From positions 496,001 to 560,000 of the forward strand of contig NC_045708.1 of NCBI RefSeq assembly GCF_009834535.1: a DNA stretch of 64,000 nucleotides, written 5' to 3'. The number at the start of each line of letters is the position of its first letter. Within the stretch, counting starts at the first letter, position 1. The notes under the pieces were generated by a model. It saw only the letters and a program-made list of their open reading frames with translations, did no database searches and was not told the origin of the DNA. Position numbers and translations under genes: made by a program. This DNA comes from Camelus ferus. Lineage: Eukaryota. Shown piece by piece: positions 19,121 to 64,000 of this stretch.

Positions 19121-20199
19121 TTTCNNNNNNNNNNNNNNNNNNNNNNNNNNNNNNNNNNNNNNNNNNNNNNNNNNNNNNNNNNNNNNNNNNNNNNNNNNNN
19201 NNNNNNNNNNNNNNNNNNNNNNNNNNNNNNNNNNNNNNNNNNNNNNNNNNNNNNNNNNNNNNCAGATCATCATGCCCTCTTCCTTCTTCAGTTCTGCCCC
19301 ACAAACTCCAGCCACCTTGGCCTCCCTGTCCTCCCAGATCCTTCCACTCAAGTCAGGAGATTACAGGGCTCTGCTGAGTCCCTCCACCTTGCTCTGCATC
19401 CTGAAAACAATCCAGACAGTCAGCTGGAGCAGTCACAGAGCTCAGCTCATTTCTCTCCTTCCTTTCAGGGTCATGGCCCTTCATTACCTTCTGGCCAAAG
19501 TATTTAGAACTGTTTCACACATTTTGTAGTTTTTTTTTTAGTTGTTTCCGGTGAGAGGGTAATTCTGGTCCCTGTTACTTCATCTTGACTGGAACTAGAT
19601 GTCCCACTAAGTCAATTTTAAAGAGAGTGAGCTATGGAAACTCACTCTACAGATATTAAGATATTAAGAGGTTATAATAATAAAGATAATATAGTACCAT
19701 TGTAGGAGAAGACAAACAGACCTATGGAAGACAACAGCCCCTAAACAGACCCATGTACACATGAAAATGTGGTATATTATGTAGGGGCACTGTGTACTGG
19801 AAAAGGGTTAATTGTCTCTGCAGACTGTTGGGAAAGTTAGCTCAGTGTGTTGATGTAGAGTTGGATCCCTGCCTCACACCATATACAAAGGTGATCTCTA
19901 GATAGATTAAAGACGTAAATATGAAATATAAAATCATAAAGCCAATCAAAAAATTTAGTGGGGAATATTTGTGTATTCTCTGGGTGTGCAAGGATTGCTT
20001 AAGCCCAAAAAAATGCATACAGCATAGAGAAAAATAGATAGGTCTGATGTTATCAAGATCAAGGTTTTCTTTTCAACAAAGGACACTATTGACAATCTTA
20101 ACAGTATATGAGGAAATATTTGCAACATCTGCGCAGTCAAAGGTATGTATCCAGAACTGTGCTGTTCAATACAGTACCCTCCAAACATATGTGACTATG

Positions 20200-21362
20200 T
20201 AAACTTGTTTTTACACCACATTAACAAATTGAAGAATAAAAACCATATGATCATCTCAAAAGATACAGAAAAAGCTNNNNNNNNNNNNNNNNNNNNNNNN
20301 NNNNNNNNNNNNNNNNNNNNNNNNNNNNNNNNNNNNNNNNNNNNNNNNNNNNNNNNNNNNNNNNNNNNNNNNNNNNNNNNNNNNNNNNNNNNNNNNNNNN
20401 NNNNNNNNNNNNNNNNNNNTCCAAGATGAGGAACAAGACAATGATGCCCACTCTCGCCACTTAGATTCAGCATAGTTTTGGAAGTCCTAGCCACAGCAAT
20501 CAGAGAAGAAAAGTAAATAAAAGGAAACCAAATTGGGAAAGAAGTGAAACTATAACTGTTTGCAGATGACATGATACTCACTATACACAGAAAACCTGCA
20601 GATGCTCCCAGAAAACTACTAGAGCTCATCAGTGAATTTGGTAAAGTTGCAGGGTACAAAATTAATACACAGATCAGTTGCATTTCTATACACTAACAAC
20701 AAAATATCAGGAAAAAATTAAGGAAACAACCCTATTTGCCATCACATCCAAAAGAATAAAATGCCTAGGAATAAACCCCCCTAAGGGGGCAAAAGCCCTG
20801 TACTCCAAAAACTACAAGACACTGGTGAAAGAAACTGAAGATGACACAAACAGATGGAAAGATACACTGTGTTCTTGGATTGGAAGAATCAACACCGTTA
20901 AAATGANNNNNNNNNNNNNNNNNNNNNNNNNNNNNNNNNNNNNNNNNNNNNNNNNNNNNNNNNNNNNNNNNNNNNNNNNNNNNNNNNNNNNNNNNNNNNN
21001 NNNNNNNNNNNNNNNNNNNNNNNNNNNNNNNNNNNNNNNNNNNNNNNNNNNNNNNNNNNNNNGNNNNNNNNNNNNNNNNNNNNNNNNNNNNNNNNNNNNN
21101 NNNNNNNNNNNNNNNNNNNNNNNNNNNNNNNNNNNNNNNNNNNNNNNNNNNNNNNNNNNNNNNNNNNNNNNNNNNNNNNNNNNNNNNNNNNNNNNTCAAT
21201 TAATCTATGACAAAGGAGGCAAGAATATACAGTAGAGGAAAGACAGTCTCTTCAACAAGTGGTGCTGGGACAACTGGACAGCTACCTGTAAAAGAATGAC
21301 ATTAGAGTATTCTCTAACACCATATACAAAAATAAACTCAAAATGAATTAAAGACTTAAGTA
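20200..21362 (+). mobile_element. LINE-1 ORF2 reverse-transcriptase fragment (decayed, two N gaps)
   Basis: Translates to NKLKNKNHMIISKDTEKA..., ...LFADDM (RT motif, ~20551-20575), ...NRWKDTLCSWIGRINTVKM, QLIYDKGGKNIQ. Contains stops and frameshifts. Confidence 0.93.
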
Positions 21363-25949: not shown

Positions 25950-27330
<1,381 letters not shown>

Positions 27331-42134: not shown

Positions 42135-43030
42135 GTATATATATTAATTTATTGAAGTACAGTCAGTTTACAACGTTGTGTCAATTTCTGGTGCACAGTG
42201 CACTGCTTCAGTCATACATGTACATACTTATATTCATTTTCATATTCTTTTTCACCATAAATTACTATAAGATATTGAATATAGGTCCCTGTGCTATACA
42301 GTATGAGCTTGTTTATGTATCTTATATATATTAGTTAATATCCACAAATCTCAAACTCTCGATTTATCCCTTCCCCACCTCCCCTCATAACCATAAGTTT
42401 GCTTTCTGTCTATGAGTCTGTTTCTGTTTTGTAAATAAGTTCGTTTGTCTTTTTTTTTTTTTTAAGATTCCACATATAAGTAATATCATGTGGTATTTTT
42501 GTTTCTTTTTCTGGCTTACTTCACTTAGAATGAGTCTCCAGGTCCACCCATATTGCTGCAAATGGCATTTTNNNNNNNNNNNNNNNNNNNNNNNNNNNNN
42601 NNNNNNNNNNNNNNNNNNNNNNNNNNNNNNNNNNNNNNNNNNNNNNNNNNNNNNNNNNNNNNNNNNNNNNNNNNNNNNNNNNNNNNNNNNNNNNNNNNNN
42701 NNNNNNNNNNNNNNNNNNNNNNNNNNNNNNTTGAATTCAGGTTCCCTCTGGANNNNNNNNNNNNNNNNNNNNNNNNNNNNNNNNNNNNNNNNNNNNNNNN
42801 NNNNNNNNNNNNNNNNNNNNNNNNNNNNNNNNNNNNNNNNNNNNNNNNNNNNNNNNNNNNNNNNNNNNNNNNNNNNNNNNNNNNNNNNNNNNNNNNNNNN
42901 NNNNNNNNNNNNNNNNNNNCTTTTGAATGACGGCCATTCTGACTGCTGTGAGGTGATACCTCATTATAGTTTTGATTTGCATTTTTTCTGATAATTAGCC
43001 ATATTGAGCATTTTTTCATGTGCCATTGGC
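42135..43030 (-). mobile_element. LINE-1 3' fragment with two N gaps
   Basis: MKKCSIWLIIR..., MQIKTIMRYHLTAVRMAVIQK, plus L1 3' UTR. Confidence 0.9.
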
Positions 43031-59100: not shown

Positions 59101-61063
59101 CTGTTTTTAGTAACCTTTTTTTCCTGGTTAAAGTAACCCCGCTCCGGGTATTACACCAGAAAATGTCAGCGCTGCCGGGAGCGTGCGGCCCCCACCCCAT
59201 TTCCTTCCAGTCCCTTTTCCTGGCATCTTCGGGCTTGGGGCCAGCCCCTGCTGCCTCCCCAATGGGCACTTGCTTCCCTTGAAGGGAGATGCTGCGCCCC
59301 ACCCCGCGGGTGTCCCAGCCCCCGCGAGCCTTGGTCCACTGCACCCCCAGGCGCCTCGCAGACGCCGCTACACCCTGACCCCCGCCAGGCTGCGTTGGGA
59401 CCACTTTAACCTCACGTACAGGTGCGACCCTGGCCCTGGGGGGATGGGGTGCGATGCAGCCTAGCCACAACCCCTGACCTGGACTCCCCTCCCTCCCCTC
59501 CAGGATCCTCTCCTTCCCAAGGAACCTGCTGAGCCCCAGCGAGACCCGGCGGGGCCTGGCCGCCGCCTTCCGCATGTGGAGTGACGTGTCCCCCTTCAGC
59601 TTCCGCGAGGTGGCCCCCGAGCAGCCCAGCGACCTACGCATAGGTGGGCACCGTGCCCCTGCCCCCGCCCAGCCACGAGGCCCCCTCTCAGCCCCATGCT
59701 CCCCCANNNNNNNNNNNNNNNNNNNNNNNNNNNNNNNNNNNNNNNNNNNNNNNNNNNNNNNNNNNNNNNNNNNNNNNNNNNNNNNNNNNNNNNNNNNNNN
59801 NNNNNNNNNNNNNNNNNNNNNNNNNNNNNNNNNNNNNNNNNNNNNNNNNNNNNNNNNNNNNNNNNNNNNNNNNNNNNNNNNNNNNNNNNNNNNNCCTGTG
59901 GGGGCCCTCACACCACGATGGGCATGGGGGTGGGTCTTGGGGGTCGTGGCTGCAGTGGGGCTCAAGCATGCAGGGAGGGGAAGGCTGTGAGGAGGCCTGG
60001 AGGCCTGGGTTCCCGGAGCCTGAAGCCCCCCCACCCCCACACCGCCGGAGCTGGAGCTGCATTCCTGGGGGCCAGCTCACCGCCTCGCTGGCCTGGAACA
60101 TTCTTATCTTCCCATGGCTGCGCCGAGGGAGGCTCCCTGCCCTGCCGCAGATGTGCGGGCCGCGGGGAGTAAGGCCGGCGGGCGGAGGGAGGAGGGCTGG
60201 GCCGGGGTCCGAGGCGCTGACCGGCAGGGCCTGCAGGCGTGTGGCTCACCGACCTGGTGCACGTGGCGGCCCACGAGATCGGCCACGCGCTGGGCCTGAT
60301 GCACTCTCAGCACGGCCGGGCGCTCATGCACCTCAACGCCACGCTGCGCGGCTGGAAGGCTCTGTCACAGGACGAGCTGTGGGGGCTGCACCGGCTCTAC
60401 GGTCAGTGCCCCGGCCCAGGGTGCGGGCGGGCGGGCGGGCTGGGGGCCGGGCAGGCCCTGACTCGGCCGCCGTCCTGCAGGCTGCCTGGACCGGCTGTTC
60501 GTGTGCGCGTCCTGGGCGCGGAGGGGCTTCTGCGACGCCCGCCAGCGGCTCATGAAGAGGCTGTGCCCCAGCAGCTGTGACTTCTGCTACGGTGAGGGCA
60601 GTCGGGTGCCTGCCCCGACCCGGTCTGCGCCGTGGGCCAGGCACTGAGGCGGCCTCTCCCCCCGCCCAAGCAGAGTTCCCCTTCCCCACGGTGGCCGCCA
60701 CCGCCCCGCCCCCCAGGACCAAAACCCGGCTGGTGCCGGAGGGTAGGAACGTGACCTTCCGCTGTGGCCAGAAGATCCTCCATAAGAAAGGCAAAGTGTA
60801 GTGAGTGACCCCCCCCCCAACCGGGGCGCCCAAGGGTGGGCGGCGCGGGCGGGGACGGGACCCTGCCCAGCGCTCNNNNNNNNNNNNNNNNNNNNNNNNN
60901 NNNNNNNNNNNNNNNNNNNNNNNNNNNNNNNNNNNNNNNNNNNNNNNNNNNNNNNNNNNNNNNNNNNNNNNNNNNNNNNNNNNNNNNNNNNNNNNNNNNN
61001 NNNNNNNNNNNNNNNNNNNNNNNGCTCAGCACCTACTCCTGGCGAGTCCGCGTGCGGAGCTGA
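58809..61063 (+). CDS. MMP23B: matrix metallopeptidase 23 (type II TM, furin site, zincin domain, ShKT domain, Ig-like domain)
   Basis: Exons 58809-58967, 59285-59421 (PRRRR|YTLTP), 59504-59643, [exon 4 inferred inside N gap 59707-59894], 60237-60401 (HEIGHALGLMH zinc motif), 60481-60591 (CLDRLFVC...CPSSCDFC), 60674-60800, and a last exon mostly in gap 60876-61023 ending LSTYSWRVRVRS-TGA. Confidence 0.95.
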
Positions 61064-62151: not shown

Positions 62152-64000
62152 TCAGAACTTCAGGCTGAACCCTGGGCCGGCGGCTGAGGCACCCTGGTTG
62201 GTGGTGGTGAGGTGGAAACCCGTCTCCTTCAGGTCGTCGTCACCCTGCAGAGACAGCGGCAGCGTGGGGCCCTGGCTGGGCCAGCCCCACCTCAGGGACC
62301 CCCCGAGCCTTCCCGCCCCGGCCAGCCTGCCCCTCACCAGCTGGCTGTAGCCCAGGCCTCCCTCCGGGGGCCGCGGGCTGGTGCCTCGCTTCACCCTCTG
62401 CTGTTCACTCTTGGCCGGCCACGTGGGGAACATGGAGGGGTCGATGGGGAGGGGGGTCTCTCGGAAATATTCGTGCTTGAGGCCGTCCTCTGCGTTGACC
62501 CTCCGCCCAGGGAAGTAGGTCAGGAACCTGGGAGAACAAGGGCGGTTGGGGCCACCGCGGGGTGGGGCTGGGGGAGGGCCCAGGGACAGGCGACCCCCGC
62601 CCACACGCACTTGTTCATGAGGTCGAAGCCCTGGTCTGAGAGCAGGGCCCCGAAACGCTTGCGGAGATTGTTATATGGGTACTCAGTGAAGGTCATCTTC
62701 TTGACGGCAGGGAGGTCATTGTAGCCAGGCCAGATTTTCTCACTGGGGGTCCCCAGGTCCTAAAAGAGGGGGATGTCTCAAACAGCCAGGCCCGGCAGGG
62801 AGGGGTAGTGGCCTGCAGCGCCCCCACACGGCCTAGTGGGCACCTGCAGGCGGTGCCCCAGACCCACCTTGAACACTTTGTTGATCTGATCGATTTCCGA
62901 CTTCCCAGGAAACAGTGGCTTCTGAGTCAGCAGCTCCCCAAAGATGCAGCCCACCGACCACATGTCCACGGCCGTGGAGTACTCCTGAGAGACCAGGGTG
63001 CACTCAGGGGGCTGGCAGGTCGCCCGGGCCCAGGGCTGGTTCCTGCTCACCCACACTCACCTTGGCGCCCAGCAGCAGCTCTGGGGCGCGGTACCACAGG
63101 GTCACAACAACTGGGGTGTAGGCCTTCAGAGGAGACCCGTACTCCCGTGCCAGCCCGAAGTCCCCCACCTTCAGGGATAAACGGTGGGCTGCAGCTGGGA
63201 GCTGGGCCCTCTGAGCTGGCCTGGGGGCGCTGGCCGAGGATGGGGGCCAGGCAGGGGGCGGGCTCACCTTGAGGGCGGGGGCCGGGCGGGGGCGTGGGCT
63301 CATCTCGAGGACGGGGGCCGGGCGGGGGCGTGGGCTCACCTCGAGGGCGGGGGCCGGGCGGGGGCGTGGGCTCACCTTGAGGATGCCTGCATGGCTCAGC
63401 AGCAGGTTGGATGTCTTGAGGTCGCGGTGCAGGATCCAGTTGTCGTGCAGGTGCTTCACGCCGCGCAGCAGCTGGATCATCAGGGTCTTCACCTCCCCTG
63501 CACGGAGACAGGTCAGCAAGGGCCGGCCCCGTGGGTCACCCAACACCCCAGCAGCCACCAGGCGTCCCAGCCCAGGGCACGGGTACTCTCGCCCACATGG
63601 TACAAAGGGTCAGAGTCGGAGGTCACGCTCCTTCTGCCCCAGGGACGTCACCAGTGGCCCGGGGGAGGGACACCCCTTGGGGTCGGGGTCAGGGCCACAC
63701 TGTAGGACTAAGGCCTGCAGGAGGCCCACCTGGCAGAAACGGCTGCTTCATGGTCTCCATGAGGCTCTTGAGGTCGTGTTCCACGTAGTTCATCACGATG
63801 TAGATCTTGTCCATGTTGCTGCCCACGACTATTTCCTGGGAAACAACCACGGGCCCGGTGACACCGGCGCCCAGGCCAGCCTGCTGCCTGGCTCCCCGGC
63901 TCCCCCTGACACCCGGAGCCCAGCCCTCACCCTGACAGTGACGATGTTGGGGTGCTGTGCCTTGAGGATCGTGTTGATCTCCCGCAGTGACGTGATGGGG
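62152..64000 (-). CDS. CDK11B: cyclin-dependent kinase 11 (CDK11/PITSLRE), last 8 coding exons; 5' part is outside the window
   Basis: Exons >64000-63931 ([23 protein letters not shown]), 63835-63730, 63497-63376 ([10 protein letters not shown]), 63168-63061 (VGDFGLARE...TLWYRAPE), 62984-62868, 62759-62611, 62527-62338, 62244-62152 ([11 protein letters not shown]). All GT-AG with consistent phases. Confidence 0.97.
63260..63382. repeat. 36-bp minisatellite (3 full copies plus a partial) spanning a CDK11 exon/intron junction
   Basis: Unit gggctcacc(t/c)tgagg(g/a)cgggggccgggcgggggcgt starting at 63260, 63296, 63332, with a partial copy at 63368. Confidence 0.95.

What the first reader, a model, noticed from the sequence alone, without database searches (positions are those of the whole stretch)
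63260..63382. 36-bp tandem repeat duplicates a CDK11 5' splice site in frame, just before the DFG motif
Seen on the sense strand: CCTCAAG|GTGAGCCC (true donor, 63376), then CCTCGAG|GTGAGCCC (+36, 63340), CCTCGAG-ATGAGCCC (+72, GT destroyed) and CCTCAAG|GTGAGCCC (+108, 63268, identical to the true donor core). Using the copies inserts 12 aa ([12 protein letters not shown]) or 36 aa in frame, with no stop, between [18 protein letters not shown] and VGDFG. Known: this is the catalytic-loop-to-DFG segment of an essential kinase that itself controls spliceosome activation via SF3B1. The unit is also G4-prone on the plus strand (GGGG/GGG runs). Inference: a probably polymorphic VNTR that creates competing equal-strength donors and lineage-specific kinase-insert isoforms. 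The mutated third GT may reflect selection against extra donors.
Basis: partly seen in the sequence, partly recalled or inferred. Interest (0 to 1): 0.72.

Follow-up and report, generated by a model that had tools for sequence, protein, structure and literature searches.

The report
Repeated splice donor in CDK11 intron
A 36-base stretch covering the end of a CDK11 kinase exon and its splice signal is repeated four times in this animal; this kind of repeat is already known from human genes such as F7, where normally only the first splice signal is used.

Summary
A 36-bp tandem repeat (4.1 copies, window 63235-63382) sits on the sense (minus) strand of CDK11. Its first unit is the last 7 nt of the HRDLKTSN exon plus the first 29 nt of the intron. 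The real donor (exon end 63376) is followed by two equally strong copies (63340, 63268) and one dead copy (63304, GT changed to AT). All are in frame, and the whole 207-nt intron has no stop codon.

Four other mammals have a 72-81 nt intron here with a single donor, so the array is lineage-restricted. Units 1-3 differ at 2 of 36 positions. Unit 4 differs at 10-12, so the array is old rather than an assembly stutter.

This is a new member of a known kind: minisatellites whose first unit spans an exon-intron boundary (human F7 IVS7, CBS, IFI6, LMNB2, PDGFA). In those genes the first donor is used alone or predominantly.

Not tested here: whether copy number varies, whether insert isoforms exist, and whether other camelids carry the array. 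No database protein carries the insert, which is weak evidence. The open frame and the single lost GT are both within chance.

Interest is modest. It is a natural test of two competing rules for choosing between donors.

The parts
63376..63497 (-). CDK11 coding exon ([40 protein letters not shown]), catalytic loop through most of strand beta-8. It ends in phase 0.
   Evidence: Translation. Pfam Pkinase positions 99-138. PDB 7ukz CDK11B residues 115-154, E 7e-21.
63235..63382 (-). 36-bp minisatellite, 4.1 copies. The first unit is the last 7 exon nt plus the first 29 intron nt.
   Evidence: TRF score 226. The unit is unique in the window. Units 1-3 differ pairwise at 2 of 36 positions; unit 4 differs at 10-12 of 36.
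63374..63375 (-). Authentic donor GT (AAG|GTGAGC), exon end at 63376.
   Evidence: It is the only donor that keeps the Pkinase profile continuous. U1 duplex energy -9.6 kcal/mol. The same junction sequence is the sole donor in four other mammals.
63338..63339 (-). Pseudo-donor 2 (GAG|GTGAGC). Its use would add 12 aa in frame and leave a 171-nt intron.
   Evidence: -9.7 kcal/mol. The minimum-free-energy fold pairs it with unit 3 through CCUCGAGG, but the fold is not significant (z -0.9).
63302..63303 (-). Dead pseudo-donor 3 (GAG|ATGAGC), with GT changed to AT.
   Evidence: -3.0 kcal/mol.
63266..63267 (-). Pseudo-donor 4 (AAG|GTGAGC), identical to the authentic site from -3 to +8. Its use would add 36 aa in frame and leave a 99-nt intron.
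   Evidence: -9.6 kcal/mol.
63169..63375 (-). Whole intron: 207 nt, 69 codons, stop-free in the coding frame. The acceptor is the weaker form AAG|G.
   Evidence: The orthologous introns are 72, 75, 78 and 81 nt, each with a CAG acceptor.
63061..63168 (-). Next CDK11 exon ([36 protein letters not shown]), carrying the DFG motif and activation segment.
   Evidence: Translation. Pfam Pkinase positions 140-169. tblastn with P0043.

Best explanation
This is a real, lineage-restricted, GC-rich minisatellite made by tandem duplication of the CDK11 exon-intron junction. It has one old, diverged unit (unit 4) and three young, near-identical units (units 1-3).

A 7-nt microhomology, CATCCTC, lies at the exon end and again just past the array. 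That fits an origin by replication slippage or unequal exchange (inferred).

The array lengthened an intron that is 72-81 nt in other mammals to 207 nt. It repeats the donor twice in working form and once in dead form.

The most likely behaviour (inferred by analogy, not shown here) is that the whole array is spliced out with the intron through the most upstream, authentic donor at 63376. This is what happens at the human F7 IVS7 37-bp minisatellite. The copies at 63340 and 63268 would then be silent or give only minor in-frame products of +12 and +36 aa. The array would be neutral or nearly neutral for CDK11 function.
For: - The repeat is real and unique in the window.
- The units carry substitutions, and unit 4 has diverged strongly. 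An assembly stutter would give identical copies, so this points to age.
- The kinase exons in the window are intact and conserved: the CDK11 part of frog protein P0123 matches them almost residue for residue. The locus is therefore a working, constrained gene that has lived with the array.
- Only the 63376-to-63168 junction gives a continuous kinase profile.
- Orthologous introns in four other mammals have one donor of the same sequence.
- Precedent: in F7, LMNB2 and PDGFA only the first donor of such arrays is used. In CBS and IFI6 the first donor is used plus two neighbouring pseudo-sites. In F7 minigenes, pseudo-sites work only when the sites upstream of them are inactivated.
- No protein in the searched databases carries the insert. 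This is weak evidence.
Against: - No RNA data were available, so donor use is entirely inferred.
- A contrary experimental rule exists. Two strong 5' splice sites 45 nt or more apart are spliced almost wholly from the intron-proximal (downstream) site in globin and adenovirus constructs. That rule would favour 63268.
- The donors here are stronger than the F7 ones, with seven contiguous pairs to U1. The intron is also short, so splicing probably works by intron definition.
- The database negatives are weak. Annotated camelid CDK11B proteins were never reached, and a +12 aa isoform would not have stood out.
Confidence: 0.75

Rival explanations
1. The pseudo-donors are used at appreciable levels as alternative 5' splice sites. 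This would give in-frame CDK11 isoforms with 12 or 36 extra Pro/Arg-rich residues just before VGDFG, specific to this lineage.
For: - The donors at 63340 and 63268 pair with U1 as well as the authentic one.
- All are in frame and stop-free, so the products would escape nonsense-mediated decay.
- The remaining introns of 171 and 99 nt are long enough; orthologous introns are only 72-81 nt.
- IFI6 and CBS do use the first two pseudo-sites of their arrays.
- Each unit ends in Leu-Lys or Leu-Glu. The residues just before VGDFG would be ALK or ALE instead of ILK, so the extra residues could act as a longer loop between beta-7 and beta-8 (inference).
Against: - In F7, identical pseudo-sites at almost the same spacing (37 bp) are completely silent.
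- This segment of CDK11 is almost invariant from frog to mammal.
- No insert-bearing protein was found.
Confidence: 0.2
2. The intron-proximal rule applies: the most downstream strong donor (63268) is the main one. Most CDK11 in this animal would then carry the 36-aa insert.
For: Hodson et al. [quoted passage not shown] Donor 63268 is identical to the authentic donor from -3 to +8.
Against: - It would put 36 residues into a near-invariant core strand of an essential kinase.
- The array is old enough to have gathered substitutions, so it is compatible with fitness.
- Natural arrays of this type behave the opposite way.
- The profile search would have ranked an insert of 36 aa or more at the top, and none appeared.
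Confidence: 0.04
3. The array is an assembly artefact: a single junction sequence was wrongly expanded, or the copy number is wrong.
For: - GC-rich minisatellites are hard to assemble.
- Other first-stage notes on this genome list several duplicated splice donors and an apparent frameshift in the neighbouring MIB2 gene. These notes are unchecked.
- No independent assembly of the locus was found.
Against: - The units differ by point substitutions and unit 4 carries many changes, which is unlike stutter.
- There is no gap nearby; the nearest N block is 2.2 kb away.
- The array is bounded by a microhomology, as expected for a true duplication.
Confidence: 0.05
4. The array acts at the DNA level, as an intragenic cluster of GC boxes and G4 motifs that affects transcription, polymerase pausing or replication. 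Its effect on splice-site choice would be secondary.
For: The array holds 6 GGGCGG motifs in 148 bp, against 1.7 per kb in the window. It also has 17 G-runs and 3 canonical G4 motifs on the template strand.
Against: - The whole region is 66% G+C and G4 motifs are common across the window (41 on the plus strand, 29 on the minus strand).
- The motifs follow from repeating one GC-rich unit.
- There is no conservation: other mammals lack the array.
Confidence: 0.05

Closest known systems
Human F7 intron 7 37-bp VNTR (Borensztajn et al. 2006, PLoS Genet, PMC1557585)
   Same: A minisatellite whose first unit spans the exon-intron boundary (4 exon nt plus 33 intron nt there; 7 plus 29 here). The unit length is almost the same (37 against 36 bp). 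The authentic donor is followed by copies of itself.
   Different: F7 has 5-9 units, a proven copy-number polymorphism, weak donors (UGG/gugggu) and a unit that is not a multiple of 3. Here there are 4 units, strong donors and an in-frame unit. Polymorphism and donor use are untested here.
Human CBS exon 13/intron 13 31-bp VNTR (Yang et al. 2000; Lievers et al. 2001, as cited in PMC1557585)
   Same: A boundary-spanning VNTR with repeated donors. The cited title says that a single substitution in one repeat prevents multiple alternative splicing, which parallels the GT-to-AT change in unit 3.
   Different: CBS has 15-20 units and documented use of two pseudo-sites. I know those papers only through the citing paper.
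Human IFI6 (6-16) intron 2 minisatellite (Turri et al. 1995, as cited in PMC1557585)
   Same: The repeated donors are actually used (the authentic one plus the two nearest pseudo-sites). This is the precedent for the insert-isoform reading.
   Different: IFI6 is described there as having 25 pseudo-sites, in a small interferon-induced protein rather than in the catalytic core of an essential kinase. The paper itself could not be fetched.
Engineered duplicated strong 5' splice sites (Hodson et al. 2012, NAR, PMC3413131)
   Same: Two or more donors with high U1 complementarity compete for one acceptor.
   Different: Those artificial constructs splice almost wholly from the intron-proximal site once the sites are 45 nt or more apart. 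Natural minisatellite arrays do the opposite.

Membership tests
Minisatellite whose first unit spans an exon-intron boundary (F7 IVS7 type) | Head-to-tail array of a 10-100 bp unit with at least two copies | tested here: met
   TRF: period 36, 4.1 copies, 88% matches, score 226.
Minisatellite whose first unit spans an exon-intron boundary (F7 IVS7 type) | The first unit contains the end of the exon and the authentic 5' splice site | tested here: met
   Unit 1 is 63382-63347, made of 7 exon nt plus 29 intron nt. The exon end at 63376 is fixed by the Pkinase profile and the CDK11B structure match.
Minisatellite whose first unit spans an exon-intron boundary (F7 IVS7 type) | Downstream units repeat a potentially working donor | tested here: met
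   Two of the three copies keep GT and have the same U1 duplex energy as the authentic site (-9.7 and -9.6 against -9.6 kcal/mol). One copy is dead.
Minisatellite whose first unit spans an exon-intron boundary (F7 IVS7 type) | Copy number varies between individuals (VNTR in the strict sense) | not testable with these tools
   No second assembly or reads of this species or another camelid could be reached.
Minisatellite whose first unit spans an exon-intron boundary (F7 IVS7 type) | Splicing uses the most upstream donor only or predominantly | not testable with these tools
   No transcript data. There is only indirect support: the gene is conserved, and no insert-bearing protein is in the databases.
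CDK11 (PITSLRE) kinase gene | PITSLRE motif, HRDLKTSN catalytic loop and DFG motif, with best similarity to CDK11 rather than other CDKs | tested here: met
   PITSLRE is encoded at 64000-63980. HRDLKTSN and VGDFG are present. CDK11B scores E 7e-21 against 5e-9 for CDK7. The downstream kinase exons are intact.
Alternative tandem 5' splice sites giving in-frame insert isoforms (IFI6 type) | mRNAs joined from the downstream donors are actually made | not testable with these tools
   Sequence prerequisites are met: in frame, no stop, and remaining introns of 171 and 99 nt. No transcript evidence exists, and database searches found no such protein.
G-quadruplex-forming minisatellite | Four or more runs of at least three G separated by short loops on one strand | tested here: met
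   17 G-runs and 3 canonical motifs on the plus strand within 63235-63382. This is a motif match only. Folding was not tested, and the G-rich strand is the template strand, so the RNA is C-rich.

The most novel reading that the evidence does not exclude
In this lineage the repeated donors are really used. CDK11 would then exist as a family of isoforms with 12 or 36 extra Pro/Arg-rich residues between the catalytic loop and the DFG motif. Each unit adds a Ser-Pro site, the minimal CDK target motif. Because each unit ends in Leu-Lys or Leu-Glu, strand beta-8 could re-form and the insert would loop out between beta-7 and beta-8. That could give altered or dominant-negative kinases in an enzyme that itself activates the spliceosome. 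The isoform ratio could depend on VNTR length.
Probability: 0.12. Interest if true: 0.65.

Novelty: new member of a known kind. Interest (0 to 1): 0.3.

Why it matters
Taken alone this is another example of a described oddity, a minisatellite that copies a splice donor. It is most likely harmless.

Its value is as a natural experiment. The donors are strong, two are equal to the authentic one, they lie 36 and 108 nt downstream in a very short intron, and every outcome is in frame. The relative use of each junction can therefore be read from mRNA without distortion by nonsense-mediated decay.

Two published rules make opposite predictions here. Oriented scanning predicts the first donor (F7). 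Intron-proximal preference predicts the last strong donor (globin constructs). A few RNA-seq junction counts from camel or alpaca tissue would decide between them for a natural gene.

If the downstream donors are used, an essential and almost invariant kinase would carry a lineage-specific insert next to its active site.

Tried and rejected
1. Independent copies of the array. A protein search with the 184-aa genomic ORF that reads through both exons and the intron found no protein with the repeat. Two exact-pattern scans of JGI metagenome contigs, one for two adjacent units and one for the exon end plus unit 1, found nothing.

2. Annotated camelid CDK11B and its possible insert isoforms.
- The representatives search gave only non-mammalian full-length CDK11.
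- A profile of frog CDK11 plus the window ORF returned frogs and birds in its best 120.
- The length filter (0.55-1.75 times the query), 90% clustering and the 120-row list kept camelid entries out of reach.
- Spliced proteins cannot be passed by reference, so this line was dropped and the third protein search was not spent.

3. Reaching the locus through neighbouring genes. MMP23B exons lie at about 59.1-60.8 kb and the MIB2 RING exon at about 56.5 kb. Neither gives a stop-free reference long enough to find the full-length proteins.

4. RNA structure as an explanation for silent pseudo-donors. The fold of 63150-63420 is no more stable than shuffles (z -0.9). The CCUCGAGG pairing between units 2 and 3 is only suggestive.

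5. Selection against the third GT, and the open frame as a special feature. Both are within chance.

6. Deciding which unit is ancestral. Alignments with outgroup introns were ambiguous in this low-complexity GC-rich sequence.

7. Structure prediction of the insert isoforms was not done, because the spliced sequence has no reference.

Full report
**Observation**

Reading the minus (sense) strand of 62900-64000 shows a CDK11 exon ending ...CAT GCA GGC ATC CTC AAG, followed by GTGAGCCC.

Tandem Repeats Finder reports one array at 63235-63382: period 36, 4.1 copies, 88% matches, no indels, score 226. It is the only tandem repeat scoring 100 or more in the window. The unit occurs nowhere else in the window, with 3 matches at up to 3 mismatches against 0 expected.

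In register, the four units are:

| Unit | Coordinates | Junction sequence |
|---|---|---|
| 1 | 63382-63347 | CCTCAAG\|GTGAGC |
| 2 | 63346-63311 | CCTCGAG\|GTGAGC |
| 3 | 63310-63275 | CCTCGAG\|ATGAGC |
| 4 | 63274-63239 | CCTCAAG\|GTGAGC |

The exon ends in phase 0 at 63376, and the next exon ([11 protein letters not shown]...) starts at 63168 after an AAG acceptor. The intron is 207 nt, which is 69 codons with no stop in frame. Splicing from 63340 would add [12 protein letters not shown], and splicing from 63268 would add 36 residues. Every coordinate and sequence in the finding is correct.

**Gene identity**

The exon matches Pfam Pkinase positions 99-138 and the next exon matches positions 140-169. 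The canonical junction therefore leaves no unexplained gap in the profile.

The best solved structure is CDK11B (7ukz, E 7e-21). The next family, CDK7, scores 5e-9. PITSLRE is encoded at the window's end, and the following kinase exons are intact.

MMP23B exons and a MIB2 RING exon lie downstream. From my own knowledge of the human 1p36 gene order, this fits MIB2-MMP23B-CDK11B. Other notes of this scan call the genome camelid. I did not verify that.

**Donor strength**

Predicted duplexes with the U1 5' end are:

| Donor (exon end) | Energy (kcal/mol) |
|---|---|
| 63376 (authentic) | -9.6 |
| 63340 | -9.7 |
| 63304 (AT copy) | -3.0 |
| 63268 | -9.6 |

No other GT in the intron is usable. The claim of equal-strength donors therefore holds at the sequence level. 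The introns that would remain, 171 and 99 nt, are longer than the whole orthologous intron of other mammals.

**Comparison with other species**

The genomic ORF 63004-63558 reads through both exons and the intron. I used it as a query. It found equivalent read-through ORFs from other mammal-like genomes, mostly host DNA in metagenome and Logan assemblies.

I fetched DNA for four of them. Their introns are 72, 75, 78 and 81 nt, each starting AAG|GTGAGCCC, with one donor and a CAG acceptor. Five further mammal-like ORFs also show no second donor in their intron-encoded peptide.

The array is therefore restricted to the window's lineage, and it has roughly tripled the intron's length. The species of the outgroups are unknown. 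No other camelid could be reached, so I cannot say whether the array is shared among camelids or varies between them.

**Age and origin**

Units 1-3 differ pairwise at 2 of 36 positions. Unit 4 differs from them at 10-12 positions, partly through compensating small indels seen by eye. This is the pattern of an old duplication followed by a younger expansion or by homogenisation of the upstream units. It argues against an assembly stutter.

CATCCTC occurs at the exon end and again immediately after unit 4. That is the sort of microhomology that seeds a tandem duplication (inference).

**What is not special**

- The open frame is expected: 59% of shuffles of this C-rich intron stay stop-free.
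- A unit length divisible by three has a prior of one in three.
- One substitution hitting a GT among 3-5 substitutions has a 16-25% chance. No selection against extra donors can be claimed.
- The predicted RNA fold is no more stable than shuffles (z -0.9). Its pairing of the palindromic CCUCGAGG of unit 2 with unit 3 would mask pseudo-donor 2, but this is only suggestive.
- The G4 claim is correct for the plus strand, with 17 G-runs and 3 canonical motifs. However, this is the template strand, the RNA is C-rich, and G4 motifs are common throughout this GC-rich window.

**What is known**

The literature search found Borensztajn et al. 2006 (PMC1557585), which describes exactly this class: minisatellites whose first monomer spans an exon-intron boundary.

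- In human F7 intron 7, a 37-bp VNTR (4 exon nt plus 33 intron nt, 5-9 units) repeats the donor. Only the most upstream site is used. Pseudo-sites become active one by one only when the sites upstream of them are destroyed. Even improved pseudo-sites do not compete.
- The same paper lists LMNB2 and PDGFA, where only the first donor is used.
- It also lists CBS and IFI6, where the first donor plus two pseudo-sites are used.
- It cites a CBS paper whose title says that a single substitution in one repeat prevents multiple alternative splicing.

Against this stands the rule from engineered substrates. Two strong sites 45 nt or more apart splice almost wholly from the intron-proximal site (Hodson et al. 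2012, PMC3413131).

CDK11's role in phosphorylating SF3B1 during spliceosome activation is well documented. Nothing links that role to this repeat.

**Most likely mechanism**

Shown:
- A real boundary-spanning minisatellite with two intact, equal-strength, in-frame pseudo-donors.
- An otherwise intact and highly conserved CDK11.
- Absence of the array in other mammals.

Inferred:
- The authentic upstream donor is used predominantly, and the array leaves with the intron, as in F7.
- The array is old and sits in an essential, nearly invariant kinase core, so it must be compatible with function. This favours silent or minor pseudo-donors over a major 36-aa insert.

My estimates are:

| Reading | Probability |
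|---|---|
| Upstream donor dominates | about 0.75 |
| Appreciable insert isoforms | 0.2 |
| Downstream donor dominates | 0.04 |
| Assembly artefact | 0.05 |
| Mainly a DNA-level role | 0.05 |

These were judged separately and overlap in part, so they do not sum to 1.

**Search for insert isoforms**

Three searches returned no protein carrying the insert:
- the word-indexed search;
- the exhaustive representatives search;
- a profile that contained the intron-encoded segment as match columns.

An insert of 36 aa or more should have topped. A 12-aa insert would not have stood out. Annotated camelid proteins were never seen, so this negative is weak.

**Verdict**

This is a new member of a known kind.

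Interest is modest (0.3). The case is unusually clean for testing the two competing donor-choice rules in a natural gene, and a lineage-specific insert next to the DFG motif of CDK11 would be notable if it were expressed. The default expectation from every natural precedent is that little or nothing comes of the extra donors.

Noticed in passing
window 63169-63171 (minus strand); L001, L004, L008, L010 intron ends: The acceptor of this intron is AAG|G with a short pyrimidine tract. All four other mammals sampled have CAG|G. The lengthened intron therefore also has a weaker 3' splice site.
   Followed up: partly
L001 1508-1579, L004 1606-1686, L008 175-252, L010 1606-1680: The orthologous CDK11 intron is very short (72-81 nt), a multiple of three and stop-free in each sampled mammal. 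Intron retention would give in-frame proteins there too. These loci were found through read-through ORFs, so the sample is biased toward that property.
   Followed up: partly
protein P0008 (Logan contig, unnamed mammal): Another mammal's copy of the same intron encodes GLTCESW twice in a row. This suggests a separate 21-nt internal tandem duplication that does not include the donor, so this intron may be prone to small duplications.
   Followed up: no
protein P0121 (468 aa, representatives library): A predicted invertebrate-like CDK11 protein contains the DFG exon segment ([37 protein letters not shown]) twice in tandem. This is either a duplicated exon or a mis-assembly.
   Followed up: no
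protein P0123 (Ranitomeya imitator, 507 aa): An annotated frog protein fuses a retroelement-like N-terminus carrying a chromo domain to the CDK11 kinase domain. It is probably a gene-model chimera.
   Followed up: no
window 19125-19262, 20277-20419, 20907-21195, 26545-26700, 42572-42919, 59707-59894, 60876-61023: There are nine N blocks of 132-188 bases. Block 59707-59894 falls inside the MMP23B coding region, just after the exon segment that encodes WSDVSPFSFREV. The blocks were left as they are.
   Followed up: no
window 59132-60798 (+) and about 56500 (+): MMP23B exons (RRRRYTL, HEIGHALGL and RCGQKILHKKGKV segments) and a MIB2 RING-finger exon lie just downstream of the CDK11 3' end. This gives the gene order MIB2-MMP23B-CDK11.
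   Followed up: partly
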